NCBI RefSeq assembly: GCF_001447785.1
Contig: NW_015170278.1
Coordinates: forward strand, 1,762,357-1,826,356
Direction: 5' to 3'
Source: Gekko japonicus
Lineage: Eukaryota
DNA length: 64,000 nt
A model generated the notes under the pieces. That model was given only the letters and a program-made list of their open reading frames with translations, was not told where the DNA came from and did no database searches. Positions within the stretch are counted from its first letter, which is position 1; every line of letters starts with the position of its first letter. Positions 2,078 through 47,827 of the stretch are shown piece after piece. Both the position numbers and the translations under genes were made by a program.

Positions 2078-2195
2078 ATGCTGCCAGAGAAAGACTCTAA
2101 AAAGCTGGGGGAGAAGGACCCCAAGGAAGACCCATCGGTCACTCTTTTCCGGGAGTATCTGAGAATCAAGACTGTCCAGCCAGAGCCTGATTATG
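2078..2195 (+). CDS. ACY1: ACY1 first coding exon (human exon 2); acceptor AG at 2046-2047
   Basis: [39 protein letters not shown], donor g|gtatg, phase 1; a polypyrimidine tract precedes 2047. Confidence 0.93.
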
Positions 2196-11100: not shown

Positions 11101-14100
11101 AGACCTGAGAACTTTCAGTAATGAATGGCAAATATGTTGAACATGATGCTTGCAGACATTTCCATGTTTTGTCTTTATCAATCTGTTCTACAAGCAACGT
11201 TCTATACAGTAAGATAGTAGAGAGTTGAAGGAAAGGGGGGGAAATCTTTTTCTTCATATGGAGCTTCTTCTCCTTACGTCCCTCTTCCACAATGTCTGTG
11301 CGCATAAAAATAAAAATGAGTGATTTTCCCTTCCCTCAAGGTCTCTGCAGTTCATGGAGAGCTGAGACGTAATTGCCATTAATAACCTTGTAAGTGTAGT
11401 TGTGGAGCCTTAATTTTAATTAAATGCTGAAATGATATTTGAAATTCTATGAAGTCTATCTTGTAGTTGTGGGGTCCAAACCTTCCCCTTTCCTTTGTGG
11501 GAGGATGCAGGTTGTTGTGTATCACAGCAGTACATCATCTTGGACAATAAAGAACAAGTATGTTTCAGTGATTAGGACTGTGGATAGACTTGGGACGTCC
11601 TGTGTGGCTCAACATTGCTTGATGGCTTTAGGCAACTTGCTGTTCTGCTTGAGAGAGACAAACATATAAAACCTGTAAAGCATTTCCTCAGTAAATGCTT
11701 AAAGGAAAATGCATAAATGGATAAGCGCAGCATGCTTGGCATAAAACAAGGGAGTCAAGTGAGCAAGATAGATGTGGAAGGAAGACACAACCAACAAGAG
11801 ACTTTTTTGGAACTGGTCTACAAGGACTTCCCCTCCAGTTGCCATTTACCTTGGGGCCAGTGTTTTACTGCTGAATGCTGCACAAAGCATAGAAGGGCTA
11901 GGTATTGATGTGATAAATTTGAACGGTTTTTGAAATTAAGGAAAAAAAAGTTACATGGGCATATGTCGTTTTTATAGTGGTTTTCTCCCTCCTTCCAGAC
12001 TCATCAGTGAAATTCCTGGAGAGAATGGCTTCTGAACTTAACCTGCAGTGTCAGAAAGTGGAGGTAAGCCATGTGAACACCCATACTTTGTGTCTGTAGG
12101 GTTGCCTACAGGCTTGGAGAAAAATGTCCAGCCCGGTTAATATTTATTTGTCTTCGCTTGTTTCCGCAAGCTTCAGACTACTTATAACCTACATTTCTCA
12201 TTGGGACTCAAGGTGAGTTACACAGAGTAAGTCAATACAATCAACAGGGTAGGCCATCCAAGAAACAATGCAATAGGATTTGTATTGTAGAAATCTGGAA
12301 CCAACCGGACAACTGGAAACCAAACTGAAGCAAAGCATAAGTATTAACATGACGAATGAAAGGATTCAAAAATTACCCAGTAGAATTCGACTTACAGCAA
12401 CAGGCAGCATAAGGTTTACACAGTAGTATAGACCACAGTTTCTAGCACTTTACCCAAGTAACTGTAGGGCAGTCAGTGGAGTGACTGCAGAATGGAAGTG
12501 TAATATGCATGTTCCATCTAGCTCCCAATAATAGCTGAGGTGCAGTGTTCTTCTGCACCAGTTGGAGTCTCCATGTTGATTTTGAGGGGAGAACAATATA
12601 AAGTGCGTTTAAGTAGTCTAGTCTTGATGTTACTATATCATGGATTCGGGTGGCCAGATTGGTCTGATCCAGCAAGGCTTTTCTTACGTTCTAAAGAGGC
12701 ATGGCCTTGATTTACATTCAGATGGAGGTTGTTGATTAAAGCTAGCATGGCTGTCTCTGTCCCATTGCCTGGCCTAAAGCCAACAGAAAGGAGTCCAGAG
12801 CAGATGAGTTATCCAAGAGGGTATCATAATGCAATAAATTAATCCAAATGTCATAAACCACTGCATGAAGCAACATATTTCTGCTCCATCAGGTCATAAA
12901 CTATTACAGACTGGCCTGTTCTCAACAAGTCCAAAATAAATAGACATATTGTTTTCTAGGTATTGTACTCATCACTCTGCAATAAGCCATTTGAAAAAGG
13001 TTTGTTTCTGTCATGTGTAGCTTGCTGTTTCAGGGTGGGGGGGAAGTAGCTTTTCAGTGGCACACTGTCAAACCCATGTGAACTGCGATTATCTCTGCGT
13101 TGTCTCATTTCTCCTTCATTATTTACAGTCAAATGAAATTCTCATGTTTCATTCTGTACCTTAACAAGTATGAGGGTTAGGGTGGGAGAGAGGGATTATA
13201 CACAAGTTATTGTAATAAAGCAGAATTTTAACTTTCTTATAATAAAAATGTACACTTACATTTGAATAGCTTATCAGTCCAATGGGCAAATGCCAAGGGT
13301 TTTCCCCCACAGGAATATTTTATTTACTGATCAGCTTCGTATCCCACCCTCTCCCTCAGCTCAGTCTGAATATTGGAGGAGTCCTTTTATCCAGTCAACA
13401 GCCCTTGTAATTTATTCCAGGTTTCTCATAGTGTCTCAGAATTTAAAACCACTTCTCCCTGGCCCAGCACTCTACCCACAATACTATCTTGCCTCCTGTA
13501 TGGCAATCCTAGGCACTTTAGCTTAATAGAGGCTTAATGTGTAGAAGTAAAAAGCTGAAGCTTCTCGTGGCATGGAGATAAATAGCATCCCATTAAGCCT
13601 CTGTTTTCTCCAGGTAGTTGACATACCTTTGTGTCTGTGTTTCACCAGGATGCCTGACTATGCTTGGTTCAACATCATATGGTCTTGCTATGCTTGTGAC
13701 TTGGGGAATGAGATGTCATCTAATTTCCTGTTATGTAGGAGGCCTTGTGCTAAAGAAAATTATTTGGTCCCAGTTCTGGTACATTTTGGAGGAGGGGCTG
13801 TGGCCCAATGAAGGAGCCTTTTCTTTTCATGCAGAAGGTCCCAGGTTCAAAGGTAACCAAAAAGGTTGAAACAAAGAAAAAGAAAGTCAAATATAACTGT
13901 ACACAGAGTGCAAAAGTACAAAATATAATATATAATTTAATAATACAATTGCAAGTAAAGTATCATTTAAAAATAACAATCCTATGGTTAAGCATATAAG
14001 TACCTAATCCTGATATAAAGACAAATGTCCATTCATATAAATACAGGTTAAAAGGTATATAAAGTTTCCATATGCAAAAACCAATACCAAATGCGTTTCA

Positions 14101-17100: not shown

Positions 17101-20100
17101 CTCTCCCAAATTGGCCTACCTCAGATAGGTAAAATACCCCTTGCAAATCATATCTTTTTAATTTTTGAAAGAGGCATTCATTAGTGAAGTTAAATCACTT
17201 CGAGAACTGAGGCTTGCCTCTAATCTAGCATTTGTTGTGGGAACCAAGGACATTTTTAAAGACTACCGACAGTTAACAATCTTCCGGCTTGCCTCTAATC
17301 TAGCATTTGTTGTGAGAACCAAGGACATTTTTAAAGACTGTACCAACAATTAACAGTCTTCCTGAATCTGTTGGTTGTTCCTAGAAGTTCTGTAGCTCCT
17401 CTGGACCCCTGAGGAATCTCTGTGGTTAGAAAGTACTGTTTTTTATTATGTCCTCAGAAACCGAGCTGCAGATGTGGACCTGCGTCGGAGGGAGCTTCTT
17501 GGAACGTCTTGACTTGCCTCTTGGACGGGTTCTGTCTTTATTTTGGGTTCTGAGGGTCATACTGATTCTGCCTGTGATGCTATATCCTATCCATAGCGTC
17601 TTTTCATGGAATGAATTGACTTCTTTCAGCCTTGCAAATAAGTGGACAGAAATTACTAGTCCATAGAGTCCCCCTACAGCTGCCTGCCTAGATGTTCTTA
17701 AACTTGTCATGTGTGGCACATTGAGCCAACTCTCTTCTGAATGTGCTCTTGCCTGTTCACTTAAGATGATATTACTTCCCACAGGGAGCAAGTGAGTGTC
17801 TGTTGTCTCCCAGCTTCTCATTCGAATTAATAGAATGATCCTCTTGTCTTTCTAAGAAGGGGGAAAGAATAATAACCCCCATTCAAATCTTCAGATTGCT
17901 GCAAAATCCAAGCTATAAAAAGTAGAATACCAAACAGGGTCTCCACATAGTAATACAAGAGTCCTCTTGATACCGTTATTGCCATTATATGGAGCCCCCT
18001 TCTTATAAAAAGAGGTTTTGTGGTACAGTGTATAGGAACTTTCTTAGAGATCTTTCTATCCATACAGCTTCAAAGAAAGGAAGAACAATCCCCTGCTGAC
18101 CTAATTTTCTATTGCAGGTTTGCCCTGGCCGTGTGATCACCATTCTGACCTGGAAAGGCACAAACCCACAACTCCGTTCCATCTTGCTGAATTCCCACAC
18201 AGATGTCGTGCCTGTGTTTGAGGTTAGTGAAGGAGGGGCAGGTTAGGGGTTGAAGGCTTTCTAATCTTCCGGCTACTTGTGATTTGGCTTTGGGGAATAG
18301 ATGTTGTTGGTCTGAGCGTGTTCTTATCTAGAATTCCCGGTGACAGGATATTTTGCTCCAGAAGAGAAATCCTCCTCCTGTCTCACCTATGTTTTGAACC
18401 CACAGTAGATGTAGGTTACAGTGCTTATGTAGGTGTAATGCATTCTCACACACCCCTACTTACCATATCAACACCAGTGCCATCCTAGATGGTTTAGTAC
18501 AACAAAGTCCATTCTGAATTAATTCAGGTGAAGAGGGTGCATGATATCTTTGACAAAATTAATTCTGTCACTTCATTCAGAGGCACTTCGATATGTTCCT
18601 GGGTTTGTGGGAACAGAGTGCCAACTTCAGGGGAAAAATAAAGATGTACAAGACCTTTGGGTGGTACCATGGTAGGTTATGGAACAGCTTCTCTAAAACA
18701 GTTATACCAGGCTCCCAAGAACTCTTTTCCCACAAAGAATGAGCTAAATAGCATTATTTTAAAAACTCTTATCTGTCATGGCCAACCACCGGAAACCATC
18801 TGGATGAAATTATACAGGCTTTTCCTCGGTGTCTTTTCAGACTGGGTTGGACTGAGCAGATAATGAATCTGCTTCAGTATTGTAGCCAACACAACTTCTA
18901 ATGAATCTGCTTCAGTATTGTAGCCAACTTGTGGTGTGGTCTCCTTCCACTGAGTGACAGTGGGAACTCCATTTTGAGGTAATTGTCTCTGTCCTTTGGC
19001 CCTAAGGCAGCACTGAAGGGGCCGAGTTAACATGAGGCCCTTTTCAGGTAGGACTTGATGGCTGATTCAGAGCAGCTCTTCACTCAAAGAACCGATACTT
19101 GTGATGTTAGAAATGTGAAAAATTTCTGTTGATTTCAGTCCCCTGGACTTGAATCGTGAAAGGCTCATAGTTTAAATGAATCTTTGAGAGAACCAATTCT
19201 TCTGTATTATCCTTTGCTGCTGCTGAGAAAAGCCCTTTTTGCGTTTGTCTTGGTTTGGGTTCAGGTTGAGTTGTGAAGCTTACACCTCTCTGCTTCTCTA
19301 ATTTAGCCTCTTAGTGGTTGATTCTCCAAGGCATAGGGGGATGAGCTCCCTAACAACTTCTGTACAGGCTTTGCTTATTCAAGGAAGATAGATCCATCAA
19401 AGGGTATGAGCCACAGTAGTTAAATGGAACATATAGGGAGGCAGTAATTCTCTGAATACCAGTGCAGGGAGGCATCAACAGAGGGAGGCACCTTTATGCC
19501 ATGCTTGTGGGTCTTCCTGTGGCATCTGGCTGGGCAGTGTGTGAAACAGGAGGCTGGAGTAGATGGACCATGAGTCTCATGGCTACTCTTATGTTCTCAT
19601 ACAGCTGTCCTGTCCTTGTCATCTTGTCTCCACCTCCCTTTGCTTAGGGGCAGATTGCCACTCCGTTCAGTCCAGAAGTAGCTCCAGAGACATCCTTCTC
19701 CTCACAGCTTTGTTGCATTCCCTAGGGTGCCATTCTTGTGTAGCCTTGTATCCTCCAGCATCCTCATCCATCTTCTAAGGGGTACTCTGTGCTGTTTTCC
19801 CATTCCTGCAGGATTATTGGTGCTGTGACCCCTTTGCAGCTTTCAAGGACTCTGATGGAAACATCTATGCTCGTGGAGCTCAGGATATGAAATGTGTCTC
19901 CATTCAGTAAGTCCAGCCACCTTCCCTGTCACATTTCTGTTGTATAGTGGAATTTTCCTGTGCTAATTAAAAGGGTTTCTGTGCCAGTTCTGCATTGGAG
20001 AGTGATGGGAAGTGGGAAGCATGGCTGAGAGGATCTTTCCACCTTACCACATCAAGTACTCACTTTAGTTACATCCACATGAATCTGTAGAAGGGATGGA

Positions 20101-23100
20101 AGTCAGTGATCAAGGTAATGTGGAGAGCCAGTGTGGCATAGCGGTCAAGACTGTCAGACCAGTATCTGGGAGACCCAGGTTCAAATCTCCACTTGTGCCA
20201 TGGAAGCTCATTGGGTGACCTTGGGCCAGTCACACTCCAGGCCTAACCTACCTCACAGGGTTGTTGTGGGGATAAAAAGGAGGAGAGGAGATTTATGCAA
20301 GCCACTTTTGGTTCTCACTGGGGAGAAAGGTAGGGTATGAATGAATGAATGAATGAATGAATGAATGAATGAATGAATGAATGAATGAATGAATGAAATA
20401 ATCTTATGACTTGTATCAAGTAGTTATTACTGGTCTGGTACCCTCAATGAAAACTGGAATAAGTGGGCTGCCCAGACACAACTGTGAGCTGGTGTGTTGT
20501 TGTTACATGTCTGGGAGTGAAAAAGAGATTTTTGGAACTGTTTTATGTATTAAGTGTATAGGAGCAGGTTGCTTCCATTTTGAACTGCAAGGCATGTCTT
20601 AGGTGCGAGGGAATTCTGATCCAAGCTTTTGTTAACTATGGTAGTCCTTATGCTCCCCTCACTCCCGGCATGGCTTTTCTTTAAATCAGATGCTTCATCT
20701 CCTTCATCATGCCTTTCTCTGGGTACAGTCCTGACTGAGTACGGGTCAAGTATCCCTGTGTCCCCGGAAGTTTTAGCAACCACTAAACAAAACCTCTTTC
20801 TCGTTAGATACATAGAGGCCATCCGGAGGCTGAAAGCTGAAGGGAGACATTTCCCAAGAACAGTTCATATGAGCTTTGTCCCAGGTAAGTTAAATAGTGG
20901 GACATAAAGAAGCAGCCAGTTGTTTCCTAGCATCTGCCCAGAGTGGTAGAACCTGAAAGTGGCTGAGCTGGAGATGGGATGACCCACAGTGCAATCCTAA
21001 ACAGAGTTATACCCTCCTAAGCCTGTTGGTTTCAATAGACTTAGAAGGGAGTAACTCTGCTTAGGACTGTACTGGTAGGCTTTTTGGATCAAGGGATACT
21101 TTCATTAGAGGCAGATCTCCAATAAACCAAGAAGCAGGTGTCTAAGGAAATACATAGAAGCTAGCAAAGTATTGGTATCTGTTCAGCGTGTGTCTGCCAC
21201 AGTCTGATAGCTCTGTATTAGTTTGGGCCTCATCTATTTTCTACTCCCCAGGCCACTCACCCCACTTCTGTCTCCAAAATGTAACCAGTTAGGCCAGAAG
21301 GAATAAAGTAGCCAAACATGTCAAGAATTGAAAAATTAGATTTCATGTGTAGAGAAAATGATGGTGGTTTAAAAACCCACTTCTTTGATTTTCCATAGTA
21401 TTTGGTCCCATCTGTTCTGCTCTCTTACCCCCCTTTGCTCAGGTGCTCAAAGAACCATTCCTATTCTCTCTCTAGATTTTAAAAGAGTAACAAATTTATA
21501 TGCTAGATTTAGCATCATGTAATTGTATTACACTTTAGGAAAAAGAGGCTGAGTCTCAGCTTAAAAGACAGCAGTAGCAGCTGACATTCATTCACTCCAA
21601 TCCCTGCCAAACACACTTAGACTGTGTATCGTCTCCTTCCCCACTTAATAACCCACCCCAGAAAAAAACAAACAGCCCCAATTACGCCCACATCCATTGA
21701 CTGCGGAGCGCAGAAGCTCTCAGTCTCACTCTGCACCCATCTTTGGGTGCATCCTAAACACTGGCTGTGTATACGCTCATGCACAACAGAACTCAATATC
21801 TAACGATCACCCTTCAAACCCTTTCCACCCTTCAGTGTGCAAAGAAGGCAGCTCACCATATTGAGGAACAAGCGGCTCCCACAAGGGGCCGGAAAAGGCG
21901 GGTTTCTGCTGTCGCCATGGAGACGAGATGGAAGTCGAATACAGTGACGCGTAATTGGCTAAATGCTGCCTAAAGCAGGAACTGACGGAAAGTTTCGTCC
22001 AGACCCGGCCTACTCAAGACGCGGCGCTCCTATCGGCGCTGTGACAGACTGGGAGAGTTATGTGCGCATGCGTTAATGGAGATCGTATTAACGGCGAGGA
22101 TGCTAATTAGCTCACGGCGGGGGGGATGGCTCAATTAAACCTTATGGGGGAACATTTTAAACAAACAACCACAGACACCAGCCATCTTACAAACACAGGT
22201 AACTTCCAGTCTGTGAGTGGTCCGAAATCACAGCTTCCACGGCAAGAACCTGGGTCTGGCAGACCCTGCTCTGAAGCACTAACTGCTGTGCCTAGAGTAG
22301 CGAACCTCCAAGTAGAGCCTGAAGATCGCTGGTTATCGTAACTGAACTCCAGACAACAGATCTCTTCCCCCCCTGGAGTAAATAAATGCTTTGGATGGTG
22401 GCCTCTATGGCATTCTATTCAGCTGAGGCCTCTCCTCTCCCCTCTCCGAACTCTGGCTTCCTTACACTAGCTTCCTTAGACACAGAATAGCCTGGAATTT
22501 CCCATCCTGGAGCTGGCAACCCTAGTCAGGACTGGCTCCAATGCGTTCCTCACAACAGCCACTGAGGGGGAAGTTAGTCCTGCACAGGAGGCAAGCAGGA
22601 GAAGCGTCTTTGTCAAGAGAGAAAGCTGTTTGCCAGTAATTCTGACAGGGCACAGTGGCTGAAGGGGAAGTGGGCGGGGAAGAGGAGCAGACCCAGCACC
22701 TGGCCAATGGCACATGAGTACTCTTGAGTGGCGGCTGATGGGCCAATGGCTGAGGGAGCACATTTCACAGCCAATGGGAGAGCTGGAAAGTGCCACTCCA
22801 CTTCACAATTATATATAAGGAGAGATTCATGCCTGACTTTCCATAATTATTTATTCCATTTATACCCTTTCTTTCTTTCATCATACAATTCAAGACAGCA
22901 TGATAAGGTTTCCAGGAGGTCTCCCATCCTGGCAATGCCCCAGTCTTGTTCTGCTCCAGCAAGTTTGCTGCAGATCAGACCTTGGGGCCAAGACGAGTGG
23001 GGGTGGGGGGAGGAAAAATGAGCCATCTTTGCAGCACTACTGGAGGGACAAAGCTGGGAAAATTCTCCCCCAAGCTGTTGTCTCTTGAGGGCTGCAGTGA

Positions 23101-26100
23101 ACCCCTCCCCCCCATCAACAAGCATCAACTGACCGTTGGGGACAGGTGGGATCTTTTGATGTCACTAGCCTGTCCATCTGCTTTCCCTCCTGCTGAAGAG
23201 ATGGTCCTTGGTGGTTACCTACTGCTTCCTTCAACCTAAGAGAGAGAAGAGTCCTGTTAGGGCACAAGCTAGCTACCATAGAAAAAGGAGTCTTCTGCTC
23301 CACTTTTTTGGGTATTTTTGCATTTGTGTGTGCGTGTGTGCGCACGCCCCTGTGCCTGGACTGGAAGTCATGGCAACCTCTGGTGACTCCTACTGGGGCA
23401 TGAAGGATGTTTAGAGAAATGGCTTGATAGCCTGCCCCTGCCTCCTGGCCTTGGTATTTTTGGAGGTCTCCCATCCAAATACTTGCCAGGGTTGGCCCTG
23501 CTTAGCTTCTGAGATCTGACGAGATCAGGCTTGCTGGGCTATCCAGGTCAGGGCCCTTCTGCTCCACTTTTGAGGCACAAGGATGTGAACATTTTGACCT
23601 GCCTAAGACTAATGAATGCCTTGGCCACTTAGCTGATTCAGAATTGCCACTGCTGTGGCTTCCTTGCGTATAAGATATCACAGAAAGCCTACTGTATCTT
23701 CTAGCCAAACATATTGCCAATTCTGTCTTTTGTTTCCCTGTAGGTCTGGCGAACCCATCAGACACCTTCACTGTATTCTATGGTGAGAAATGCCCATGGT
23801 GTAAGTAAGATTTAGGATTCCATCTTGTATGAAGCTGCAGAGTCATTGGTCCAGATCGCTAACTCTGACTGGCTGTGGCTCTGCAGGGTCTTAGGCAGAG
23901 CAATATTTTTCCTCCTCCTGCTTCCCAAGAGCATTTTTAGCCAAAGATGCCAGGGACTGAACCTAGGACCTTCTGCAGTGTCCTGCCACTGAGCCACAGC
24001 CCCTCTACCCATTTGTAGTTTCTAAAAACATGCCTTCTATCTATTTCTCATTGTTCTATTTAAAGATACACATCTTAAGAACTGTACTAAAAATGCAGAT
24101 AAAACTTTATAAGAAAACTAACATGTGTGTGTGTTTCACAGTGAATGCACAAATTCTTCCAAACTGTTCTGGAGTTTTGCCATTCATATGTCATAGTTGT
24201 GAAAAACACATATGTAATCCTTTATTAAGATTTTAATCTTCTTGGGGGAGCCAAAATAGATAATTGGGCCAGCTTCCTGTCGGTATTGAAGTGGAATATA
24301 TAAGATTCTTAGCCACAGATGTTTTTCACTTTTGCAACAGATTGTAATCTGTGGATTTAAAGTTACACTACTGGGCTGTATTTGGAATATAAGACCCTCA
24401 CGGGGACAGAGTACGCATGGCATTGGAATTCTGTGATTGAAACTCCACACTTATAATTTGCTGTCAAGAACAGTTGTGGAGATGCCCCTGTAAGAAACAT
24501 GATCATGGTGCTAGGCAAGGGAGATTAAACTCTTACCCTGTCTTATTTCTCTGATCAAAATGCCCCCACCAACTGCTGTGAATCTCAGTAGACGGCCACA
24601 ACAAATGAATCTCTTTTTACCCCTACTAGGACTTAAAGAGCATGTGGGGAGCCATTTCCAGTTGGGCTGTGTGGGGGAAAGGTAACACCCCCTCCCCAGT
24701 GTAGTGGCTGTGATTCTGATCGGGGGCCCCCATGGCTCTTTTATAGGGCCAAGCAGCACATCTGGAATTGCAGCCACAGAAGTTCAGCTTTGTGTGTTGT
24801 TTGGCCCTTAGCCACATCTTTTTTTAAAGTGTTTTTATACTTCAAAATATTCAGCTAACAGCTTTTGTGACTGCTTCTGTTGAATTGCAGCTTTACAAAG
24901 TATTCATATCTGCTCTGTATTCTTGGTGCTTGGGGGGCAACAGTGGGAGGGCTTCTGGAGTTCTGGCCCCACTGGTGGACCTCCTGATGGCACCTGGGTT
25001 TTGGCCACTATGTGAGTGTTGGACTGGATGGGCCCATTGGCCTGATCCAGCATGGCTTCTGTTATGTTCTTATATCTGAATTTTGCTATCCGTGTGCATC
25101 AAAAAATTGACATTCGTGCATGAACCCCAATGATCCTGCACCTTTTAAAAATGAGTATTCAAAAATGAAGAAATACACCAGTGGGTACTGACTGTCACTT
25201 AAACATGATTGATAATGTTCAGTGATGTATGTTTTAAGAGTAGAAGTATAGATATCTCCTAAGAGAGCCAGCAGTTGGATCATGTGCTATAAAGATGCGC
25301 TGGAGTTGTTGGTGCCAAGACCCTGCTTCTCTTCCAGCTGGCTGTGCCCTATTTCTTTCCATTAGCAACTGCTTTCTTGCTATCGCTTTCTTAAATCTTT
25401 TGTATAAACATTTGCGTAAGGTTTGGAATTTAAATTCTTTTAAACAATGTTTTGCTTACTCAGAGGAATTCCATTTTTAGTGTGACTCTCAGGACCTAAA
25501 TAGATGGTATGCTGGAGTTCCATGTCAGGAGCTCCTGGTGGTTTTTTAAAAGGCTTTTACCAGTGTGTGTGTGTGGTGGTGGTGGGTTTTGTTGTTGTTT
25601 TTTAGGCTTTTACACAGGACATAACTAGATGGTGCACTCCATGTTACAAACTAGAAGATACACTGGGAGTTCCATGTCAGGAGCTCCCAGTGTTTTTTAA
25701 GGCTTTTTACCAGGTGGGCTGGGACCAATTCAGACTGGCACCAGGGGAGGATTTTTAAAGCACCCCTCCCTGCACTGTTTCCCAATCTCAAATGGCCCCA
25801 GTGGGTTATTGTTCGCCATGTTATGAAGCTTCTGTGTACTAACCAGAACATGTAAGTCTTCATAACAGGGGAAATAGCACCCCAACTGTTTTCAAGTGGG
25901 GGAAATGGCATGGGGAAGGCTTAAAATCCCCCTTCCCCTCATGTCCCAGTCTGATATTCTAACTACGATATCACAACACCTCCTCTCACAAAGTTGTGAA
26001 TTCTTCTGTTGCAGTCATTCCCATTGCTAAAGGAAGAGCCCACAGCCCACTTTTCAAAGCAAGCGCTCTCCTTGACAGTGGGAAGCGTGGAAGCAGTTCT

Positions 26101-29100
26101 CCTTTCAGTGTAGGTGTTGCTCCTTTTGATCGTGACCCATATACTTTGGAAATTCTGCTGCAAGAGGTTCCAGCTCCATTTGTAGCTGGGCCACATGGTG
26201 CTTCTCTCCTTGTTCTGCTTGCCTTTCATTTTGCTCTTCCTCTCCTTCATACTTGCAGGGATTAAAGTGAAAGTAGAAGGGAACCCTGGACATGGATCTA
26301 GATTCATTGAGGACACAGCTGCTGAAAAGCTGGTAAGAGAACACCCTGTAAAGGCTAGAGGCAGGGTGCGGAGAGGGGCTGCTTGTGTGAGGCCACAGGA
26401 GACAGTCGGTTTCTTAGACCTGCTGTGAAAGCAGATGTCAGGCTACCTTCATAAGCATCATCTTGCACAAGCCAGACGCACTGCCTCTGGGGAAGTGTAG
26501 ACTTGACATCTCCCAGGTACTAGACATCTTACATTAAAAATCTGGTATTTGCTTGGTAGGTTGTACTCTATTTGATTTGACTCTTGTACTTTCCTATCCA
26601 CAGCACAGAGTGATCACTTCCTTCCTAGAGTTCAGAGAGCGTGAAAAACAAAGGTGAGGGGGAAGCCTGTAGTGTAAGCCAGATTTTTCTTCCCTGACCT
26701 CTTCCAGGGCTTACTTTCATTCACTTATGCCATAAGAGCAAGATTCAAGTCCCGGGGCATAAGCTTTCAAGAGTCAAAGCTCCGTCAGATGGGACTCGAA
26801 TCTTGCTCTTCTACTGCAGACCAACACAGTTACCATTGGGAAATTACACCATAACAGTAGCTGTGTTTGTCTACAGAAGCACAAAAAGAAGAAAAAGTGC
26901 TTTGATAACTCAGAAGTGAAACTGATTATGACATGGCCCTTCCTATGGAGACAGACACTTCATCAGATGCATAAAGTGGGCTGTTCTTTAATCATCAGTG
27001 GCCATCTGTCTGAAGGCAGAGTCCGAGACTTTGAAGTTTTGCTTCCTGCATCTGCTGTTCACACCCTGTGTGGCACTGGGCCAGACATCTCCATTTATTT
27101 GTTGCTCAGTTTATCCTTTTGTATAATGAAACTGGGAACTGGTGTAGCCTAATCATTAAGAAGGAGACATCCAAATTTCTGGTTCCTATCCCATGTGTAT
27201 AATGAAACTGGGAACTGGTGTAGCATAATCATTAAGAAGGTTCCTATCCCACGAACTCACCAGGTGGCCATAGACAAACTGCTGTCTCCCATCTTTCCAT
27301 GCACAATAGCATGTTAGTAATAATGGCCAGCCTAGCAAAATGATGTAAGACAATATAAAAATAAAAGCACAATGAACAATTAGAAACAAGTATTGTGCAA
27401 CATTATGACAACTTTTGCCAGTTCTGTTTGCAAATTACGTAGTTGTATGATAGATTTATTATTTGCTTCCAGTTATAATTTGCTATTTATCGGCATGCAA
27501 AGGTTATTAGCTTGTTTTCAGAGCAATCAGTAGAGTTTTTGATTCACAAGGGCATTGTAGGATCAGCCCGTCTTTTAGTTCCATTTCTGATACTGTTCAG
27601 TGGACCCTACTGGTGCATGGCTTGCTACAGTCTGAACAGTTTAAGCACCTCAGCTAAGGTGCAGGTGTGATATTCATCAACAGTTTTCCAACTCTGTGTA
27701 GCGGAGGACATGGGTGCTTTGGTAGTATCAGCCACACTTGGGACAGAAATAGAGTGTCAGAAGCAGGGTATGTGTATGCTTCAAGAACTCTTGCAAAGTA
27801 CTGTTATCATGTATGAGAGAGGTATTTTATGCAGTCCATTTTCTGTGGATAGGGCTGTTAGTCACTCTGCCTTTTGCAAATGCCCATGGTTCCTACAGAT
27901 GTTTGGGAAAATGAGCTTGAGCCCAAGAATGTGCTGTTGGGGTGGCTCTTCAATCTCTGGAAGTTAGGAAGAAGCTTCCAGAGTTTCACCAAGGTGGGGT
28001 GAAAGACTTTGTCCTTTCCTTCACACAGGTTGAAATCAGAGAAGCACCTTACCTTAGGCGATGTAACCTCCCTTAACCTAACCATGTTGAATGGGGGCAT
28101 CTCCTTCAATGTGGTCCCCTCTGAGATGTCTGCTGGCTTTGACATCCGCATACCACCCACAGTGGATTTAAAGGTACAATAGAGAAACAGGTAGAGAAAT
28201 GGTGAGCAGTTTTCAGTCTGTGAGATGTTGCCTGGAATCTATGATACCTCCTGGGAGCTGCCTGGAATGTGTCTTGGACTGTGATTCTTATAGCTGTATT
28301 TTCCAGGGTCCTTCACATTAAAAAAAAAAGAGTTGAAAACATGTTATTAAAAAAAATTGAACTATTAAGAAAGATCTCTCCTTGCATTGGTTGCAGTTGA
28401 TGATGTAGCGGTTTCTGTTGTTTAAAAGCTTTTTATTGTCAGGATAATGTAATCCATTTTAAACATTTTTTTGTTTGTTTAAAAGCTTTTTATTGTTAAA
28501 GCTTTTTATTGGATGATGTAGCGGTTTCTTGGAGCCCTGATTGGCTGTGGCTGAGAGAACCAGAAGGACTGGTCCTGAGGCCCAGTCCCATTCTCCTGTC
28601 CTTTGTTCTATCTGAGACGCAACAGCAGAGGCAGGTCATTCCTTCCAAATGCAAGAAAGCATTTGCAGCAACAGGCTGCAAGAAAATAGAGACCTCACTA
28701 GCGCAACCAATAAGGGGATCATCGGAGACCCTGCATGGCCTTACGCCAACTCGGGACACTGATTAAAGCTTTTTTTTTTTTTTAAGAAGCATCTGATTTG
28801 TACCGTTATGTGGCTAGAACTGGTAAAGGTGGAAAGCAGAATATTATGGGATAAATTGAGAGGCTTATGGAATGACAAGCCAGACTGAAATCAGGATCTT
28901 CACTCAGGAATCACTCACTTTCCCACGGTCTGTCTTGCAGGCGTTTGAAGAGCAGCTCACAGCCTGGTGCCGGGCAGCTGGGGAAGGTGTTGCCTATGAG
29001 TTCCACCAGGTAACTGCAGAGAGGAGGGAGCATTCCAGCAGCTTGTTGCCGTCCCTTAGACCTGGGAGCATTGATCCATTCCTGGTCTTTGACTCTGTTC

Positions 29101-30432
29101 TCTACCTTACGACTGCCACAGTCTCTCTGCCCTGGGTCTTTTGTCTCAACACGGCTACCTTTCTGTTCTGCACTGTGTCCCTCACTCTCTTGCGCTCCTG
29201 CTGCCGCTTCTGCTCTGCCCTGGCCACAGACTCTTGCACTGTGGGTGCTGCGTTGCTGCCTCCTCCAAGCTTTACCTTCTACCCTTCTCTTTGGGCTAGA
29301 AATACACGGATCAGTCGATGACCTCCACAGAGGAATCTGACCCCTGGTGGAAAGCATTCAGTAGCACCTGCAGGGACATGTGAGTAAGGTGCCATATCTT
29401 CCCCACTCTTACACTCGCTCCTTCGGGTGCATGTATGTATGTAAAGCTATCCTGTCAAATGCTTGGAGGAGGTCTGCCTTCCTTTACCCAGTGCCCTGTA
29501 TGTTAAGTGTTACTGCTAAATGGGCAGCTTACTGCTGGTGGCTGTTCCATTTGCAAGGCACAGAGGAGGCAATGTCAATTGGGAGGGGGGGGCGACATTC
29601 AAAGCATTCAGAACAGTGCCTGTATAAAGAACAAGGGAGTTGCCCAGTGACCCTGAACCTTCCCAACATTTCCCCTGTTCTCTCCTATGAGGTATCCTCA
29701 ACTCCAGTTGCCAGTTTGGTGTAGTGGTTAGGACGGCAGACTCTAATCTGGGAGAACTGGGTTTGATTCCCTACTCTTCCACATGCAGCTACTGGTGTGA
29801 CCTTTGGTCAGTCATAACTTCTTTCAGAGCTGTTCTCAAGAGCAGTTTCTGTCAAGAGCTCTCTCAGCCCCACCCACCTCACAGGGTGTCTGTTGTGGGG
29901 AGGGGAAGGGAAAGGAGTTTGTAAGCCGCTCTGAGACTCCTTCGGGTAGTGAAAGGTGGGGTGTAAATCCAATCTCCTCCTCTTCTCCCATTATAAAAAT
30001 GCCCACTGTCTGATGATCCTGCCTTCAAACACAGGAGGAGGAAGGACAGGGTTAACTCAGCAGTGGGAGCTGCTTCTTATGATGTCTCTGTCTTGTTAGG
30101 AACATGAAACTGAAGTGCGAGATCTTTCCTGCTGCCACAGACAGTCGCTATATCAGGGCAGTGAGTACAAGTTTATTTCCCGTGTCTGTCAGTCACTTGG
30201 TGTCTTCTCTTGTATTTTGTTGAGATCTTGTTTATGATAGTTACTTCTCCTTGCACTGTATTTCCAGGCAGGCCACCCAGCAATTGGATTCTCCCCCATG
30301 AACCGCACTCCTGTGCTGCTGCATGACCACAATGAATTCCTGAATGAGCAGGTCTTTCTTCGTGGGATTGAGATCTATGCCCACCTCATCCCAGCGCTGG
30401 CTAGTGTCCCTCCTCTACAAGCAGAGGCCTGA
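2078..30432 (+). CDS. ACY1: Aminoacylase-1 gene, 13 coding exons found (1161 nt, 386 aa + stop); equivalent of human exon 7 absent, so possibly a catalytically dead form, a pseudogene or a misassembly
   Basis: Spliced translation contains [70 protein letters not shown] and [17 protein letters not shown]. Exon sizes are 118/65/105/95/77/57/74/50/145/69/80/61/165, all GT-AG. Confidence 0.95.
2826..3560 (-). mobile_element. CR1 LINE 3' fragment
   Basis: ORF 3093-3506(-) [24 protein letters not shown]...WNRLP is the CR1 ORF2 C-terminus; the 3' tail reads gaatcatagaatcatag on the + strand. Confidence 0.93.
3580..4422. mobile_element. GC-rich non-autonomous DNA transposon (PIF/Harbinger-like MITE)
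   Basis: Imperfect terminal inverted repeats gggtgcggtcacac / gtgtgaccacagcc with ttt on both flanks; similar termini on the elements at 31789 and 47828. Confidence 0.55.
5000..5345 (-). mobile_element. L2-type LINE 3' end fragment
   Basis: Minus strand has the ...gccctttt cagtcgtagcc tcctatggaatg...ccttcagaagg...aaggcc 3' pattern, similar to the + strand L2 end at ~40850-40960. Confidence 0.5.
8025..8215 (-). mobile_element. tRNA-derived SINE (Squam3-like), degenerate
   Basis: Reverse complement resembles the 10106-10315 copy (gaacatatgaagctgccttg...). Confidence 0.6.
8240..8465. mobile_element. Palindromic non-autonomous Penelope-derived element (two inverted terminal repeats)
   Basis: gaacaaagtttgattccagtggcacctttaagac (~8250) is inverted by gtcttaaaggtgccactggaatcaaactttgttc (~8403-8436); related units at ~26733-26835 and ~35995-36165. 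Confidence 0.65.
10106..10315 (+). mobile_element. tRNA-derived SINE (Squam3-like), near full length
   Basis: A-box tggctcagtgg, B-box-like ggattcaatc, body ending taaggcagcttcatgtgt; several other copies in the window. Confidence 0.8.
11999..12063 (+). CDS. ACY1: ACY1 exon (human exon 3)
   Basis: ccttccag|ac ... [22 protein letters not shown] ... gag|gtaagc; 65 nt. Confidence 0.92.
12150..12650 (-). mobile_element. L2-type LINE fragment
   Basis: ORF 12442-12675(-) contains [16 protein letters not shown]...LQLVQ, the L2 RT C-terminal motif SRLDYCN. Confidence 0.7.
15020..15325 (-). mobile_element. Penelope-like element 3' fragment (GIY-YIG C-terminus and terminal repeat)
   Basis: Minus strand gives ..[25 protein letters not shown], typical of the Penelope endonuclease end. 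Confidence 0.7.
15330..15720 (-). mobile_element. L2-type LINE fragment, degenerate
   Basis: Minus-strand remnants of [17 protein letters not shown] and RLDY motifs. Confidence 0.6.
18118..18222 (+). CDS. ACY1: ACY1 exon (human exon 4), Zn ligand His (human H80)
   Basis: ttgcag|[35 protein letters not shown]|gttagt; 105 nt. Confidence 0.96.
19812..19906 (+). CDS. ACY1: ACY1 exon (human exon 5), Zn ligand Asp (human D113)
   Basis: ctgcag|[32 protein letters not shown]|gtaagt; 95 nt. Confidence 0.96.
20125..20396 (+). mobile_element. tRNA-derived SINE followed by an (ATGA)n microsatellite (20337-20396)
   Basis: agccagtgtggcatagcgg...ggttcaaatc...gggtgaccttgggccagtca...ctcacagggttgttgtg, then about 15 ATGA units. 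Confidence 0.8.
20808..20884 (+). CDS. ACY1: ACY1 exon (human exon 6)
   Basis: cgttag|a [25 protein letters not shown] g|gtaagt; 77 nt, ends in phase 1. Confidence 0.96.
20986..21074. mobile_element. Short palindromic MITE-like repeat; similar copies at ~33570-33647 and ~41818-41897
   Basis: cagtgcaatcctaaacagagtta...taactctgcttaggactgtactg forms an imperfect hairpin. Confidence 0.6.
21857..21898 (-). other. Putative short first exon with a 5' TOP-like start, resembling RPL29 exon 1 (orphan; downstream exons not found)
   Basis: Minus strand: CCTTTTCCGGCCCCTTGTGGGAGCCGCTTGTTCCTCAATATG|GTGAGC, a pyrimidine-tract start with a strong donor. It shares TTCCGG...GGGAGCCGC...TATG| with human RPL29 exon 1 as I recall it, and RPL29 is the minus-strand neighbour of ACY1 in human. 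Confidence 0.55.
21899..22125 (-). promoter_or_regulatory. CpG-rich housekeeping-type promoter
   Basis: Dense CpGs in a CpG-depleted background; RFX X-box-like gtcgccatggagac 21911-21924; minus-strand CCAAT (attgg 21954-21958) about 57 nt upstream of the putative start; ETS-like CGGAA; NRF1 motif tgcgcatgcg 22063-22072. Confidence 0.7.
22292..22524. mobile_element. hAT-type MITE of the TAGGGTTGCCA family, degenerate; further copies at ~39215-39450, 46140-46335, 46690-46900, 53540-53722, 59948-60103 and 62990-63195
   Basis: Ends in tggcaacccta and shares the internal gatctccagac...cccctggagaaaatggctgc-type body with the other copies. Confidence 0.65.
22672..22820 (+). promoter_or_regulatory. 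Promoter-like cluster: GC box, three NF-Y CCAAT boxes, TATA box
   Basis: gggcgggg 22672-22679; RRCCAATGG with CCAAT at 22704, 22743 and 22771; tatatataagg 22810-22820. Confidence 0.5.
23308..23555 (-). mobile_element. 5S rRNA-derived SINE with 16-bp target-site duplication
   Basis: ~23453-23535 (ggtctcccatccaaatact...ccctgcttagcttctgagatctgacgagatc) is the reverse complement of 5S rRNA; TSD cttctgctccactttt at 23292-23307 and 23556-23571. Confidence 0.88.
23744..23800 (+). CDS. ACY1: ACY1 exon (human exon 8)
   Basis: ctgtag|gt [18 protein letters not shown] t|gtaagt; 57 nt. Confidence 0.95.
23820..24010 (-). mobile_element. tRNA-derived SINE (Squam3-like)
   Basis: Ends ccactgagccacagcccct, the reverse complement of the SINE head. 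Confidence 0.65.
24925..25073 (+). mobile_element. CR1 3' UTR/tail fragment
   Basis: ttggactggatgggcccattggcctgatccagcatggcttctgttatgttctta, the squamate CR1 3' end pattern. Confidence 0.65.
26259..26332 (+). CDS. ACY1: ACY1 exon (human exon 9), trans-acting His (human H206)
   Basis: ttgcag|gg [24 protein letters not shown]|gtaaga; 74 nt. Confidence 0.96.
26604..26653 (+). CDS. ACY1: ACY1 exon (human exon 10)
   Basis: ccacag|[16 protein letters not shown] ag|gtgagg; 50 nt. Confidence 0.93.
28029..28173 (+). CDS. ACY1: ACY1 exon (human exon 11)
   Basis: acacag|g [48 protein letters not shown]|gtacaa; 145 nt. Confidence 0.96.
28941..29009 (+). CDS. ACY1: ACY1 exon (human exon 12)
   Basis: ttgcag|[23 protein letters not shown]|gtaact; 69 nt. 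Confidence 0.96.
29300..29379 (+). CDS. ACY1: ACY1 exon (human exon 13)
   Basis: ggctag|[26 protein letters not shown] at|gtgagt; 80 nt. Confidence 0.95.
29710..29988 (+). mobile_element. tRNA-derived SINE
   Basis: gccagtttggtgtagtggttagg...ggtttgattcc...ctcacagggtgtctgttgtgggg; same family as 49686-49935 and 63340-63860. Confidence 0.8.
30100..30160 (+). CDS. ACY1: ACY1 exon (human exon 14)
   Basis: tgttag|g [20 protein letters not shown]|gtgagt; 61 nt. Confidence 0.96.
30268..30432 (+). CDS. ACY1: ACY1 last coding exon (human exon 15), Zn ligand His (human H373)
   Basis: ttccag|[57 protein letters not shown]; the first candidate polyA hexamer I saw is attaaa at 31519. Confidence 0.96.
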
Positions 30433-31788
30433 GTGAAGGTTATAAGTGAGAGGCAGTCGTCTGAAGGAAGAAGACATAGAAACCAAAGAGAGAGAGAGAG
30501 ATGGTTGAAAAATTATATTCTTTCCTGTTGTGATCCAGGACCCTACTAGGGGGATGTAGGCCTTAGATGTTGTGGTTGAGAACTGGTGACTTACTTAGGT
30601 CTGGTGGCATCCCAGGACAAACTGTGGAACTTCAGCATCTCTGAATGGTACCACCTGGAGCAAGACATGTTTAAAGCAGACATTTAGACAGGCGCATCTA
30701 AAGCTGGGTTTTTTAGGTGACTATGACTGGTTCCCTACTCCTTACTGAAACACATACTAAGCATCCTTATTTTCCACAGTTCCTGGACTAAGTTCTCAGT
30801 TCCTAAGCTTTCTTATTGACACCTGTCCATTTCAGAGAATCCCCCCGACTCCTGATTCTCATCATAGAGGCTTCTTGGGATATGTAGGGAAGTGTGACTA
30901 CCCTCCCATTGGCCTTCGCCATAATTCCAAAGTTGTGCCATTCTTTCATGTGATCCTCATAGAAAAGCATCAGTTCCCCAGCTGCCAAACCCAAAAGCAA
31001 AGCAATAGGAGGAGCCAGAGGACCCTTAACCTGTAGGCATAACTGTGCTTTCTTTTCTGTTTGGGCACCTCCTGTAGCTGCTTTGGTGGCTTTCACTGTT
31101 GCCATGCCTGCCAAGCTCTATAGTCCAAGAACAAACTTTCTGGAGAGCCCAGGCATCACAGAAGAATCTTCATTTTAGCTCCACTGTCCATATGCTTTAT
31201 GGCTTTAGACAAATCAGCAGTTCTTTTTGTGTCTCAGATTCCTCATTGGTAGAGGGGCGTGAATGATGAAACTGCTTCCTTACTATCCAAGATCCTCCAG
31301 TGGAAGATAGTGATTCTAAAAAGGGCTGGAGTGAAAGCTAATATATAAATGACTCAGAGTGCATAGGAAATGGCAACTCCTTGGAGTGGGGGAACAGTAT
31401 TCAATGTGGCCATTGAATTTGCACTACCTCCCCCCCCCCGCCGCCGCCACAGCAGAAAGCAGTCCTTGGGAGTCAACAGCACAGTTACTGGCTGCAGCCC
31501 TCTGCCTTAAGTTTCTATATTAAACTGCTGTCTTAAAAAATGCCAGGCAGAATGAATGAGTTGAGTGACTGAACCTTGCATGCAAGAGGAAATGCTTTGG
31601 ACAGCTGGGTGCCCAACATTGTGGAAGAATGGTTTTCCTTTTGGGGTAAGGAACAAGCTATCCTATCAAATGTTTGGAGGAAGTCTGCTTTTCCTTACCC
31701 AGTGCACTGTATGTTAAGTGTTATTGCTAAATGGGCAGCTTACTACTGGAGTCGGGGATTGCCATCAGGGTGTTACTTGAGTATCATT

Positions 31789-32443
31789 GGGTGCGTTCAG
31801 ACGGGGCGTTTCAGCCGGCATAAACTGTATCGGTTGGAACCGTTGCAGCTTATGCCGGCTGAAACGCAATCACACTTACCTCCTGTCTGCGGAGCCCATT
31901 GCTGTATGCCCGTTCACACACAGCGGGCGTCGGCGGTTTGTTGGGATTTTTTTAACTTAGTTTGTGCATGCGCATAGGCAGCCATCCACAGAATGGCAAT
32001 CTTCGAGCATGCGCAAAACACCCCGTCCAGAAAAGCATGCCCTGAAGAGAGGACTTACCTTTAAGGTTTAAAGAGCAAACTGGCCTCCCTGAGGTCCTGG
32101 ACTCCTCTAAAACGTTAAACTAAGGACCTTTTCTTTTTTTTTTAAACAAACACCGGGGCGAAGCTTCGCCCAAGCGCATATTGCTGACCTAAAAAAAAAT
32201 GGCAGGCGAAAATCAGAAACCTTGGGCTTTCGAATGGTGGAGAGCGATCAGAGGGGGGTAAAGCGATTACAACCGTTGCACTCAGGATACCACCACTTGG
32301 GGACCTAGTGGCAGAATACAACGGTTTAAAGCTCTTTGCAACGGTTAGGGACAGAAGGCAGATGTTCGCTGTGTGAACGCCGGTAAGTACACCGATTCCA
32401 ACCGGCACCTATACCGTTGTAAATGCCCTGTCTGAACGCACCC
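31789..32443. mobile_element. Non-autonomous DNA transposon (PIF/Harbinger-like MITE)
   Basis: Perfect 14-bp TIR gggtgcgttcagac / gtctgaacgcaccc, extending imperfectly to about 23 bp; CpG-rich interior; TSD not evident. Confidence 0.75.
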
Positions 32444-34419: not shown

Positions 34420-34665
34420 GCTCAAATCATTTGGCCACCAAATGAGAAGGGAGCACTCACTGGAGAAGACCCTGATGCTGGGGAAGATTGAAGGTCAAAG
34501 AAGACGGGGACGGCAAAGGATGAGATGGTTGGACAGTGTCATCGACGGAACGAACATGAAGTTGAGCAAATTTCAGAGGATGGCGGAAGACAGGAAGGCC
34601 TGGCGGGATCTGGTCCATGGGGTCGCAAAGAGTCGGGGTCGACTGTGCGATTGAACAACAACAAA
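34420..34665 (+). mobile_element. RTE-BovB 3' fragment
   Basis: MRREHSLEKTLMLGKIEGQRRRGRQRMRWLDSV...VHGVAKSR; (CAA)n tail. Confidence 0.93.
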
Positions 34666-37173: not shown

Positions 37174-37571
37174 NNNNNNNNNNNNNNNNNNNNNNNNNNN
37201 NNNNNNNNNNNNNNNNNNNNNNNNNNNNNNNNNNNNNNNNNNNNNNNNNNNNNNNNNNNNNNNNNNNNNNNNNNNNNNNNNNNNNNNNNNNNNNNNNNNN
37301 NNNNNNNNNNNNNNNNNNNNNNNNNNNNNNNNNNNNNNNNNNNNNNNNNNNNNNNNNNNNNNNNNNNNNNNNNNNNNNNNNNNNNNNNNNNNNNNNNNNN
37401 NNNNNNNNNNNNNNNNNNNNNNNNNNNNNNNNNNNNNNNNNNNNNNNNNNNNNNNNNNNNNNNNNNNNNNNNNNNNNNNNNNNNNNNNNNNNNNNNNNNN
37501 NNNNNNNNNNNNNNNNNNNNNNNNNNNNNNNNNNNNNNNNNNNNNNNNNNNNNNNNNNNNNNNNNNNNNNN

Positions 37572-47422: not shown

Positions 47423-47758
47423 TAGGGTTGCCAGGTCCTACCTGGCTGCTGGCGGGGGGGACTCCCAAGCCTTCCTGAACTTCTTTTGGCATGTATGCTG
47501 TGATGACATCACCCGAAAGTCACCATTGGAAACACTCCAGGTTTTGGCCGAAACTATGGTTTTTTGGGCCTCAAAGCCATAGAGTTCTGCCCAAAACCTA
47601 GAGTGTTGCCCTCAACATCGGAAACACGATGACATCACTCTTGGGAGATGTCATCATGCCAGTGGCGCCAGGAGGAGGCTTCTGAGGGTGTGGCTTCCCC
47701 TGCCAGCCAGCTGGGCCATGGCAGATCCCCTGGCCCCATCGGGGGAATGGCAACCCTA
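47423..47758. mobile_element. hAT MITE (TAGGGTTGCCA termini) with perfect 8-bp TSD
   Basis: tagggttgcca...tggcaacccta; TSD tccctgca at 47415-47422 and 47759-47766. Confidence 0.9.
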
Positions 47759-47827
47759 TCCCTGCATCTTCATCATTCTATCATTTCAGGCTTCTGCTGT
47801 ATGAGCAAATCCGTTCTAAGGCACTTT

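What the first reader, a model, noticed from the sequence alone, without database searches (positions are those of the whole stretch)
20885..23743. ACY1 lacks the exon carrying its catalytic and Zn-binding glutamates but stays in frame
Seen: every other ACY1 coding exon is present with intact GT-AG sites and no stops. By eye I found no DEEVGG...FALDEG exon on either strand in this gap-free 2859-nt interval or elsewhere in the window. Exon 6 ends and exon 8 starts in phase 1, so the join reads ...SFVP-G-LANP... and gives 386 aa. Established: in human ACY1 this 90-nt exon encodes general base E147 and Zn ligands E148/E175, and the enzyme is a homodimer in which H206 acts in trans. Inference: if real, the product is a pseudoenzyme or null allele retaining H80, D113, H206, H373 and the dimerization domain, so it might modulate an active paralogue or allele if it folds. 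A recent loss or an assembly error explains the pattern equally well.
Basis: partly seen in the sequence, partly recalled or inferred. Interest (0 to 1): 0.8.

Follow-up and report, generated by a model that had tools for sequence, protein, structure and literature searches.

The report
Gecko ACY1 missing catalytic exon
In this draft gecko sequence the aminoacylase-1 gene lacks the 90-base exon carrying three catalytic residues; because the rest of the gene is intact and such drafts are error-prone, an assembly fault or a one-animal allele is more likely than a gecko trait.

Summary
ACY1 lies on the + strand from 2078 to 30432, with 13 coding exons, all with AG/GT sites and no stops (1158 nt, 386 codons). 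The 30-codon exon (human D146-E175: E147, E148, E175) is absent from the N-free interval 20885-23743 and from the whole window. A profile of 12 orthologous exon peptides and permissive tblastn score no better than shuffled sequence.

Whether the absence is biological could not be decided.

Indirect evidence favours an assembly fault (about 0.6) over a real, very young deletion allele (about 0.33):
- The retained exons match Gekko kuhli ACY1, which has the exon, at 282 of 285 residues, with one change specific to this lineage. There is no sign of decay.
- The interval holds an orphan antisense CpG-island, promoter-like piece with no gene body in the window.
- The N-run pattern fits a short-read draft. 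Other notes of this scan on the same genome, called there the draft Japanese gecko, list many conserved genes with missing exons. The scan has no ACY1 note on other DNA.

Exon-less ACY1 isoforms with the same join are annotated in six other vertebrates, so the product is not unprecedented. Interest is low to moderate.

The parts
2078..2195 (+). ACY1 coding exon 1 (ATG at 2078; [39 protein letters not shown])
   Evidence: tblastn with squamate ACY1; boundaries and GT donor
11999..12063 (+). ACY1 coding exon 2
   Evidence: AG/GT
18118..18222 (+). ACY1 coding exon 3 (holds LLNSHTD, the His80 equivalent)
   Evidence: AG/GT; 35/35 identical to Eublepharis
19812..19906 (+). ACY1 coding exon 4 (holds AQDMK, the Asp113 equivalent; Gekko-type YWCCDPF)
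   Evidence: Pfam Peptidase_M20 18.5 bits for this exon alone
20808..20884 (+).
   Evidence: aligns to human ACY1 residues 119-145; 25/25 identical to G. kuhli
20885..23743 (+). single 2859-nt intron where two introns and the 90-nt catalytic exon (human D146-E175) are expected; no N and no remnant of the exon
21850..22140 (-). small CpG island (GC 0.54, CpG observed/expected 1.1) with promoter-like features on the minus strand: CCAAT, GCATGCGCA, pyrimidine-rich CCTTTTCC at 21898-21891, then ATG at 21859-21857 directly followed by GT at 21856-21855. No matching gene body in the window
   Evidence: no RPL29-type coding motif in any frame of the window; also noted by scan note s1-828070
23308..23555 (-). 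SINE with a 5S-rRNA-derived head, flanked by perfect 16-nt target-site duplications (23292-23307 and 23556-23571)
   Evidence: Rfam 5S_rRNA 51.6 bits at 23443-23547; direct repeat D1
23744..23800 (+).
   Evidence: strong polypyrimidine acceptor
26259..26332 (+). ACY1 coding exon ([24 protein letters not shown]; holds the His206 equivalent)
26604..26653 (+). ACY1 coding exon
28029..28173 (+). ACY1 coding exon, dimerisation domain
   Evidence: Pfam M20_dimer 29.4 bits, above the cutoff of 21; 48/48 identical to G. kuhli
28941..29009 (+). ACY1 coding exon (holds the one replacement specific to this lineage, T to A in GVAYEF)
29300..29379 (+). ACY1 coding exon
30100..30160 (+). ACY1 coding exon
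30268..30432 (+). ACY1 last coding exon with stop TGA (holds LLHDHNE, the C-terminal His ligand motif)
   Evidence: 54/54 identical to G. kuhli

Best explanation
The gene is the ordinary single-copy aminoacylase-1 (ACY1, peptidase family M20) of a Gekko-type gecko. The 90-nt exon encoding the general base and two of the five zinc ligands is absent from the assembled letters. The most likely cause is a local fault of a short-read draft assembly. On this reading, the small piece carrying the exon was left out, lost to an unplaced contig or gap, or replaced during scaffolding and gap closing. An unrelated CpG-island piece now sits in the merged intron. The animal would then make normal 416-aa ACY1. 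Shown: the absence of the exon, the intact rest of the gene, and the odd content of the interval. Inferred: that the cause is the assembly and not the animal.
For: 1) The retained exons show no relaxation. They match Gekko kuhli ACY1 (P0275), which carries the exon, at 282 of 285 residues. Of the three differences, one belongs to this lineage and two to G. kuhli. They are 96% identical to Eublepharis, and all 24 splice sites are canonical.
2) The lost exon is the most constrained part of the protein. Nine of its 30 columns are invariant across 34 vertebrate and invertebrate ACY1 sequences, and all 12 squamate orthologues have it.
3) The interval holds a 290-nt CpG island (observed/expected 1.1, against 0.24 for the window). 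On the antisense strand it has promoter-like motifs and an ATG|GT exon end, but no gene body anywhere in the window. One misplaced piece would explain both oddities at once.
4) The window has three N runs of uneven length (319, 60 and 398) in 64 kb. That is the signature of paired-read scaffolding, with contigs of about 10-27 kb.
5) Other notes of this scan on the same genome call it the draft Japanese gecko genome. They list missing exons or short deletions in many conserved genes (CDC45, alpha-tubulin, HOXA5, PLOD1, ZBTB11, KHK and others). For PLOD1, a follow-up found a normal transcript in another animal. These are unchecked leads.
6) The published G. japonicus assembly is short-read only, with contig N50 21.1 kb and 19% fragmented and 30% missing BUSCO genes (PMC5080775).
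Against: The interval is continuous, without N. I found no usual footprint of a collapse or false join. There is no pair of like repeats flanking a breakpoint and no tandem duplication. The donor at 20885 and the acceptor at 23743 are both strong and the phases match, so the locus as written would splice cleanly. Loss of ACY1 activity is tolerated in people (PMC10789890), so a real null allele is not implausible. I did not see a single read. I could not confirm which assembly the window comes from; I showed only that its nearest protein is from the genus Gekko.
Confidence: 0.6

Rival explanations
1. A real and very young germline deletion, possibly part of a complex rearrangement that also brought in the CpG-island piece. 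It removed the exon in the sequenced animal, either as a private or polymorphic allele or as a change fixed in the species. Exon 6 would then splice directly to exon 8 in frame. The 386-aa product would lack E147, E148 and E175 and one core strand, and would be catalytically dead: in effect a null allele.
For: The sequence is gap-free, the splice sites are strong and the phases match. A de Bruijn assembler keeps one allele of a heterozygous structural variant. ACY1 deficiency in humans is recessive and often mild. Exon-less mRNAs with the same join are annotated in six other vertebrates, so the splice pattern is feasible.
Against: There is no decay in 1158 nt of retained coding sequence, and only one lineage-specific replacement against G. 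kuhli. Any loss must therefore be far younger than the split between these congeners. The orphan promoter-like piece would need a second explanation. In this assembly the base rate of faults seems much higher than that of true exon deletions (the scan notes are unchecked leads).
Confidence: 0.33
2. The exon-less protein is a working pseudoenzyme. It folds, dimerises through its intact dimerisation domain and lends His206 in trans, and so modulates an active ACY1 allele or paralogue.
For: The dimerisation-domain exons are intact (M20_dimer 29.4 bits). The His206 equivalent is retained. His206 is reported to act from the dimerisation domain (PMC4012986). The same architecture is annotated as a minor isoform in a cichlid, a viper, the tuatara, a turtle, a bird and a ray.
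Against: The missing 30 residues form short helices 155-174 and the strand 177-183 in the AlphaFold model of full-length gecko ACY1. In the model of a natural exon-less isoform, pLDDT falls below 50 at the join. It falls to 59-77, from 84-98, in the C-terminal catalytic part, and a strand is lost there. There is no second ACY1 copy in the window. There is no expression evidence.
Confidence: 0.04
3. The exon is in the window after all, either diverged beyond recognition or under one of the N runs.
For: Three N runs exist (277-595, 10632-10691, 37174-37571), two of them long enough to hide 90 nt.
Against: The exon is nearly invariant in squamates and the neighbouring exons are 100% identical to G. 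kuhli, so divergence beyond detection is not credible. Profile and tblastn searches are at chance level. The N runs lie outside the intron where the exon belongs.
Confidence: 0.03

Closest known systems
Human aminoacylase-1 (ACY1; PDB 1Q7L), peptidase family M20
   Same: Orthologue. The exon before the gap aligns to human residues 119-145. The Gekko kuhli protein aligns to residues 89-198 without gaps. The two-domain build is the same: a zinc-binding catalytic domain plus a dimerisation domain.
   Different: The window encodes nothing for human D146-E175, which holds the general base E147 and the ligands E148 and E175.
Annotated exon-skipped ACY1 isoforms in other vertebrates (P0270 Vipera latastei isoform 2-T3, P0273 Sphenodon, P0278/P0279 Chrysemys isoforms X4/X3, P0295 Nyctibius isoform X3, P0152 Mobula birostris isoform X2, P0004 Astatotilapia)
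   Same: The join is exactly the same..(F/M)(V/M)P-G-LA(N/S)P.., with the same 30-residue loss. The squamate and tuatara forms have the same 386-aa length.
   Different: Those are predicted transcript isoforms. For Vipera latastei and Astatotilapia calliptera a full-length form of the same species is also in the set (P0326; P0245). For Mobula the only full-length form retrieved is from another species, M. hypostoma (P0011). Here the exon is absent from the DNA as assembled.
Human ACY1 deficiency alleles
   Same: Loss of aminoacylase-1 function that is compatible with life (PMC10789890).
   Different: These are rare recessive disease alleles in humans. Here it would be an in-frame loss of a whole exon in a gecko, and it is unproven.
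Other exon or base losses noted in the same draft genome by this scan (PLOD1, CDC45, ZBTB11, ZUP1, NIPA2-like, alpha-tubulin, KHK, ABHD3, HOXA5)
   Same: A conserved gene that is otherwise intact lacks a piece in continuous sequence.
   Different: They are different genes. Only PLOD1 has a follow-up, which read it as an assembly slip or a one-animal allele. These are unchecked notes.

Membership tests
ACY1 orthologue (aminoacylase-1 gene) | Exon-by-exon collinear match to vertebrate ACY1 with conserved exon phases | tested here: met
   Thirteen exons are collinear with squamate ACY1. Identity is 98.9% to G. kuhli over 285 residues and 96% to Eublepharis over 380.
Peptidase M20 / aminoacylase-1 enzymes | Peptidase_M20 catalytic domain (PF01546) | tested here: inconclusive
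   Searched exon by exon only. Two exons hit PF01546 at 18.5 and 16.6 bits, each below the whole-protein cutoff of 24.6. The near-identical orthologues carry PF01546. The central part of the domain is missing.
Peptidase M20 / aminoacylase-1 enzymes | M20 dimerisation domain (PF07687) | tested here: met
   Exon 28029-28173 alone scores 29.4 bits, above the cutoff of 21.
Peptidase M20 / aminoacylase-1 enzymes | Full set of zinc ligands (human H80, D113, E148, E175, H373) | tested here: not met
   The H80, D113 and C-terminal HDH motifs are present in retained exons. E148 and E175 lie in the absent exon. The residue roles come from established knowledge of the family (Lindner et al. 2003, from my own knowledge).
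Peptidase M20 / aminoacylase-1 enzymes | General-base glutamate (human E147, the DEE motif) | tested here: not met
   There is no DEE.GG-type motif of ACY1 context in any frame of the window.
Peptidase M20 / aminoacylase-1 enzymes | Histidine of the dimerisation domain acting on the partner's active site (human H206) | tested here: met
   GNPGHGSRF is present in exon 26259-26332. The role of H206 is as cited in PMC4012986.
Ribosomal protein L29 gene (RPL29), for the antisense promoter-like piece | RPL29 coding exons downstream of the promoter or first exon | tested here: not met
   None of 24 conserved RPL29 peptide motifs matched in RPL29 context in six frames of the window: 15 gave no hit and the few hits to two short motifs were in unrelated context. 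That the promoter piece is RPL29-like remains an untested recollection of another first-stage note.

The most novel reading that the evidence does not exclude
The deletion is real. A Gekko species, or part of its population, carries as its only ACY1 gene an allele that has cleanly lost the catalytic exon. It would make constitutively the same in-frame 386-aa, dimerisation-competent but zinc-site-less protein that other vertebrates are predicted to make only as a minor skipped isoform. That would be a natural vertebrate knock-out of aminoacylase-1, and possibly a dominant-negative one in heterozygotes.
Probability: 0.3. Interest if true: 0.5.

Novelty: not a real feature. Interest (0 to 1): 0.2.

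Why it matters
If it is an artefact, it is a concrete warning: this draft should not be used to infer gene or exon loss without read support. It also marks 20.9-23.7 kb, with its orphan CpG-island piece, as a place to re-assemble. If it is real, it would be a natural null of aminoacylase-1 in a vertebrate. That would be useful for asking how dispensable the salvage of N-acetylated amino acids is. It would also allow a test of whether the recurrently annotated exon-skipped ACY1 isoform has any activity of its own, for example by poisoning dimers.

Tried and rejected
1) A degraded remnant of the exon in the interval: rejected. tblastn was at chance level against shuffles, and the HMM on all pieces of 8 aa or more found nothing.
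2) The exon elsewhere in the window, or a second ACY1 copy: none on either strand. A weak hit at 48659-48597 (E 7.5) and two regex hits on the minus strand (29982, 53732) have no ACY1 context.
3) Repeat-mediated collapse or recombination: I found no like repeats flanking a possible breakpoint. The only within-window repeat match of the interval is 22305-22442 against 62995-63125, at 69%. The only direct repeats in the interval are the SINE's target-site duplication and a 15-mer shared by two SINE pieces. There are no tandem duplications.
4) A small RNA gene behind the promoter-like piece: Rfam finds only the 5S-derived SINE head.
5) RPL29 coding exons to go with the antisense piece: none.
Local scripts skipped them or left them out, except that the local BLAST database of the whole window, built earlier, was reused once as a target.
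8) This species' own annotated ACY1 protein: it does not appear as a cluster representative. Seven members of the 22-member squamate cluster could not be listed.
Natural exon-less proteins from the database served as stand-ins. The N runs were not filled.
Full report
**What is there.** The window holds one ACY1 (aminoacylase-1) gene on the + strand. I obtained orthologues by searching with the last exon alone, by reference, and then with database proteins. With these, tblastn maps 13 coding exons between 2078 and 30432. Refined to the base, they are:
- 2078-2195
- 11999-12063
- 18118-18222
- 19812-19906
- 20808-20884
- 23744-23800
- 26259-26332
- 26604-26653
- 28029-28173
- 28941-29009
- 29300-29379
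- 30100-30160
- 30268-30429, followed by TGA

Every acceptor is AG and every donor is GT, and there is no stop. The lengths add to 1158 nt, or 386 codons. Squamate ACY1 proteins are 414-416 aa. I did not build, search or fold the joined product.

**The missing exon.** Between 20884 and 23744 the orthologues have 30 more residues, DEEIGGHKGMEMFVKRPEF..LNVGFALDE. The interval has no N. A profile of 12 such peptides, run against every six-frame piece of 8 aa or more in the window, finds nothing (best E 0.73, outside the interval). Full-length orthologues leave exactly this part unmatched. A very permissive tblastn on the interval reaches 16.2 bits, against a mean of 15.4 and a maximum of 18.9 for 30 shuffles. 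So not even a remnant is left.

The alignment of the Gekko kuhli protein to human ACY1 (1Q7L chain A) places the missing piece at human D146-E175. It therefore holds E147, E148 and E175, while D113 lies in a retained exon. Nine of the 30 columns are invariant in 34 ACY1 sequences from vertebrates and invertebrates.

**Whose gene, and is it decaying?** The nearest protein is Gekko kuhli ACY1 (P0275), which has the exon. Over the 285 residues that can be compared exon by exon, 282 are identical. Of the three differences, one (T to A in GVAYEF) belongs to the window's lineage and two belong to G. kuhli. Identity to Eublepharis is 96%. The unusual YWCCDPF and MSAGFD motifs are shared with G. kuhli, so the window comes from the genus Gekko or very near it. 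There is thus no sign of relaxed constraint. If the exon was really lost, it happened very recently.

**Anatomy of the interval.**
- From 20885 to about 21600 the sequence is AT-rich and almost free of CpG.
- 21850-22140 is a sharp CpG island, with GC 0.54 and CpG observed/expected 1.1, against 0.24 for the whole window.
- Read on the minus strand, the island shows GCATGCGCA, a CCAAT box and a pyrimidine-rich CCTTTTCC (21898-21891). It then has an ATG (21859-21857) followed at once by GT. It looks like the promoter and first exon of a housekeeping gene.
- Another first-stage note (s1-828070) calls this piece RPL29-like. I found no RPL29-type coding motif in any frame of the window, so the piece is an orphan here and its identity is untested.
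- Further on lie SINE pieces. One is complete, at 23308-23555, with a 5S-rRNA-derived head (Rfam 51.6 bits) and perfect 16-nt target-site duplications.
- I found no pair of like repeats that could mark a collapse or a recombination, and no tandem duplication.

**The product, if the DNA is right.** The donor CAG|GTAAGT and the acceptor with its long pyrimidine tract are strong and the phases match, so an in-frame mRNA is expected. The same join..VP-G-LA(N/S)P.., occurs in seven database proteins from six other vertebrates: a cichlid, a viper, the tuatara, the painted turtle, a potoo and a manta ray. For the viper and the cichlid a full-length form of the same species is also in the set. Skipping of this exon is therefore a recurrent predicted isoform and not a new architecture. 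Isoforms skipping the next exon, or both exons, are also annotated.

In an AlphaFold model of full-length gecko ACY1 (Eublepharis, pLDDT 90.5), the 30 residues form short helices 155-174 and the strand 177-183 of the catalytic domain. In a model of the natural exon-less viper isoform (pLDDT 84.0), confidence drops below 50 at the join. It drops to 59-77 in the C-terminal catalytic part, where one strand disappears. The dimerisation-domain exon is intact. His206 of that domain is reported to serve the partner's active site (PMC4012986). Such a protein would lack the general base and two of the five metal ligands, so it would be inactive. Whether it folds is open. Predictions of this kind do not measure stability.

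**Real or artefact?** The decisive test is to look at reads, and I could not run it. The look-up of sequencing runs listed DNA runs and three RNA raw-read runs of the same species label.

What remains is indirect, and it leans towards an artefact:
- The gene is otherwise pristine.
- A foreign-looking orphan CpG-island piece sits exactly where the exon should be. One misplaced piece explains both oddities, whereas a real deletion needs a second event.
- The three N runs of 319, 60 and 398 letters in 64 kb fit a short-read, paired-read scaffold.
- Other notes of this scan call this genome the draft Japanese gecko genome. They list missing exons or short deletions in many conserved and even essential genes. 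For PLOD1, a follow-up found a normal transcript in another animal. These are unchecked leads.
- The published G. japonicus assembly is short-read only, with contig N50 21.1 kb and 19% fragmented and 30% missing BUSCO genes (PMC5080775).

Against an artefact:
- The interval is continuous.
- I found no footprint of a false join.
- ACY1 loss is tolerated in humans (PMC10789890).

**Verdict.** The best explanation is a local assembly fault (0.6). The main rival is a real, very recent deletion allele giving an inactive product (0.33). A functional pseudoenzyme (0.04) and a hidden exon (0.03) are unlikely. Interest is low to moderate until reads are examined. The scan has not reported this ACY1 feature on other DNA, but it has reported the same kind of defect in other genes of this genome.

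Noticed in passing
window 21850-22140 (minus strand): A sharp CpG island (observed/expected 1.1) with housekeeping-promoter motifs and an exon-like end, ATG|GT at 21859-21855, antisense inside the ACY1 intron. No gene body for it is in the window. The RPL29 identity claimed by another note is untested.
   Followed up: partly
window 23292-23571: A complete 248-nt SINE with a 5S-rRNA-derived head (Rfam 51.6 bits) and perfect 16-nt target-site duplications. It looks like a young insertion. A fragment of the same family lies near 22915.
   Followed up: partly
proteins P0004, P0152, P0270, P0273, P0278, P0279, P0295: Predicted ACY1 isoforms lacking exactly the catalytic exon, with the same join, recur in six distant vertebrates. 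Isoforms skipping the next exon (P0277, P0280) or both exons (P0272, P0340) also exist. All of these skips are in frame.
   Followed up: partly
window 19812-19906 and G. kuhli P0275: Gekko-lineage ACY1 has two adjacent cysteines (YWCCDPF) where other squamates have R/H/Q/D followed by Y/H. It also has MSAGFD where others have MSAAFD. Both are shared by the window and G. kuhli.
   Followed up: no
window 56735-57745 (+), 34421-34651 (+), 3096-3587 (-): Fragments of reverse-transcriptase ORFs of non-LTR retrotransposons: by eye RTE/BovB-like at 56.7-57.7 kb and 34.4-34.65 kb, and CR1-like at 3.1-3.6 kb (no family search was run). The 34 kb downstream of ACY1 shows no recognisable conserved gene.
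   Followed up: no
window 29444-29538 and 31655-31749: A 95-nt direct repeat at 91% identity, one copy in an ACY1 intron and one downstream of the gene next to a CpG-rich stretch (31650-32550). It is probably a dispersed repeat.
   Followed up: no
window 47700-48350 and 49150-49600: Two further CpG-rich islands (observed/expected up to 0.93) with no gene assigned.
   Followed up: no
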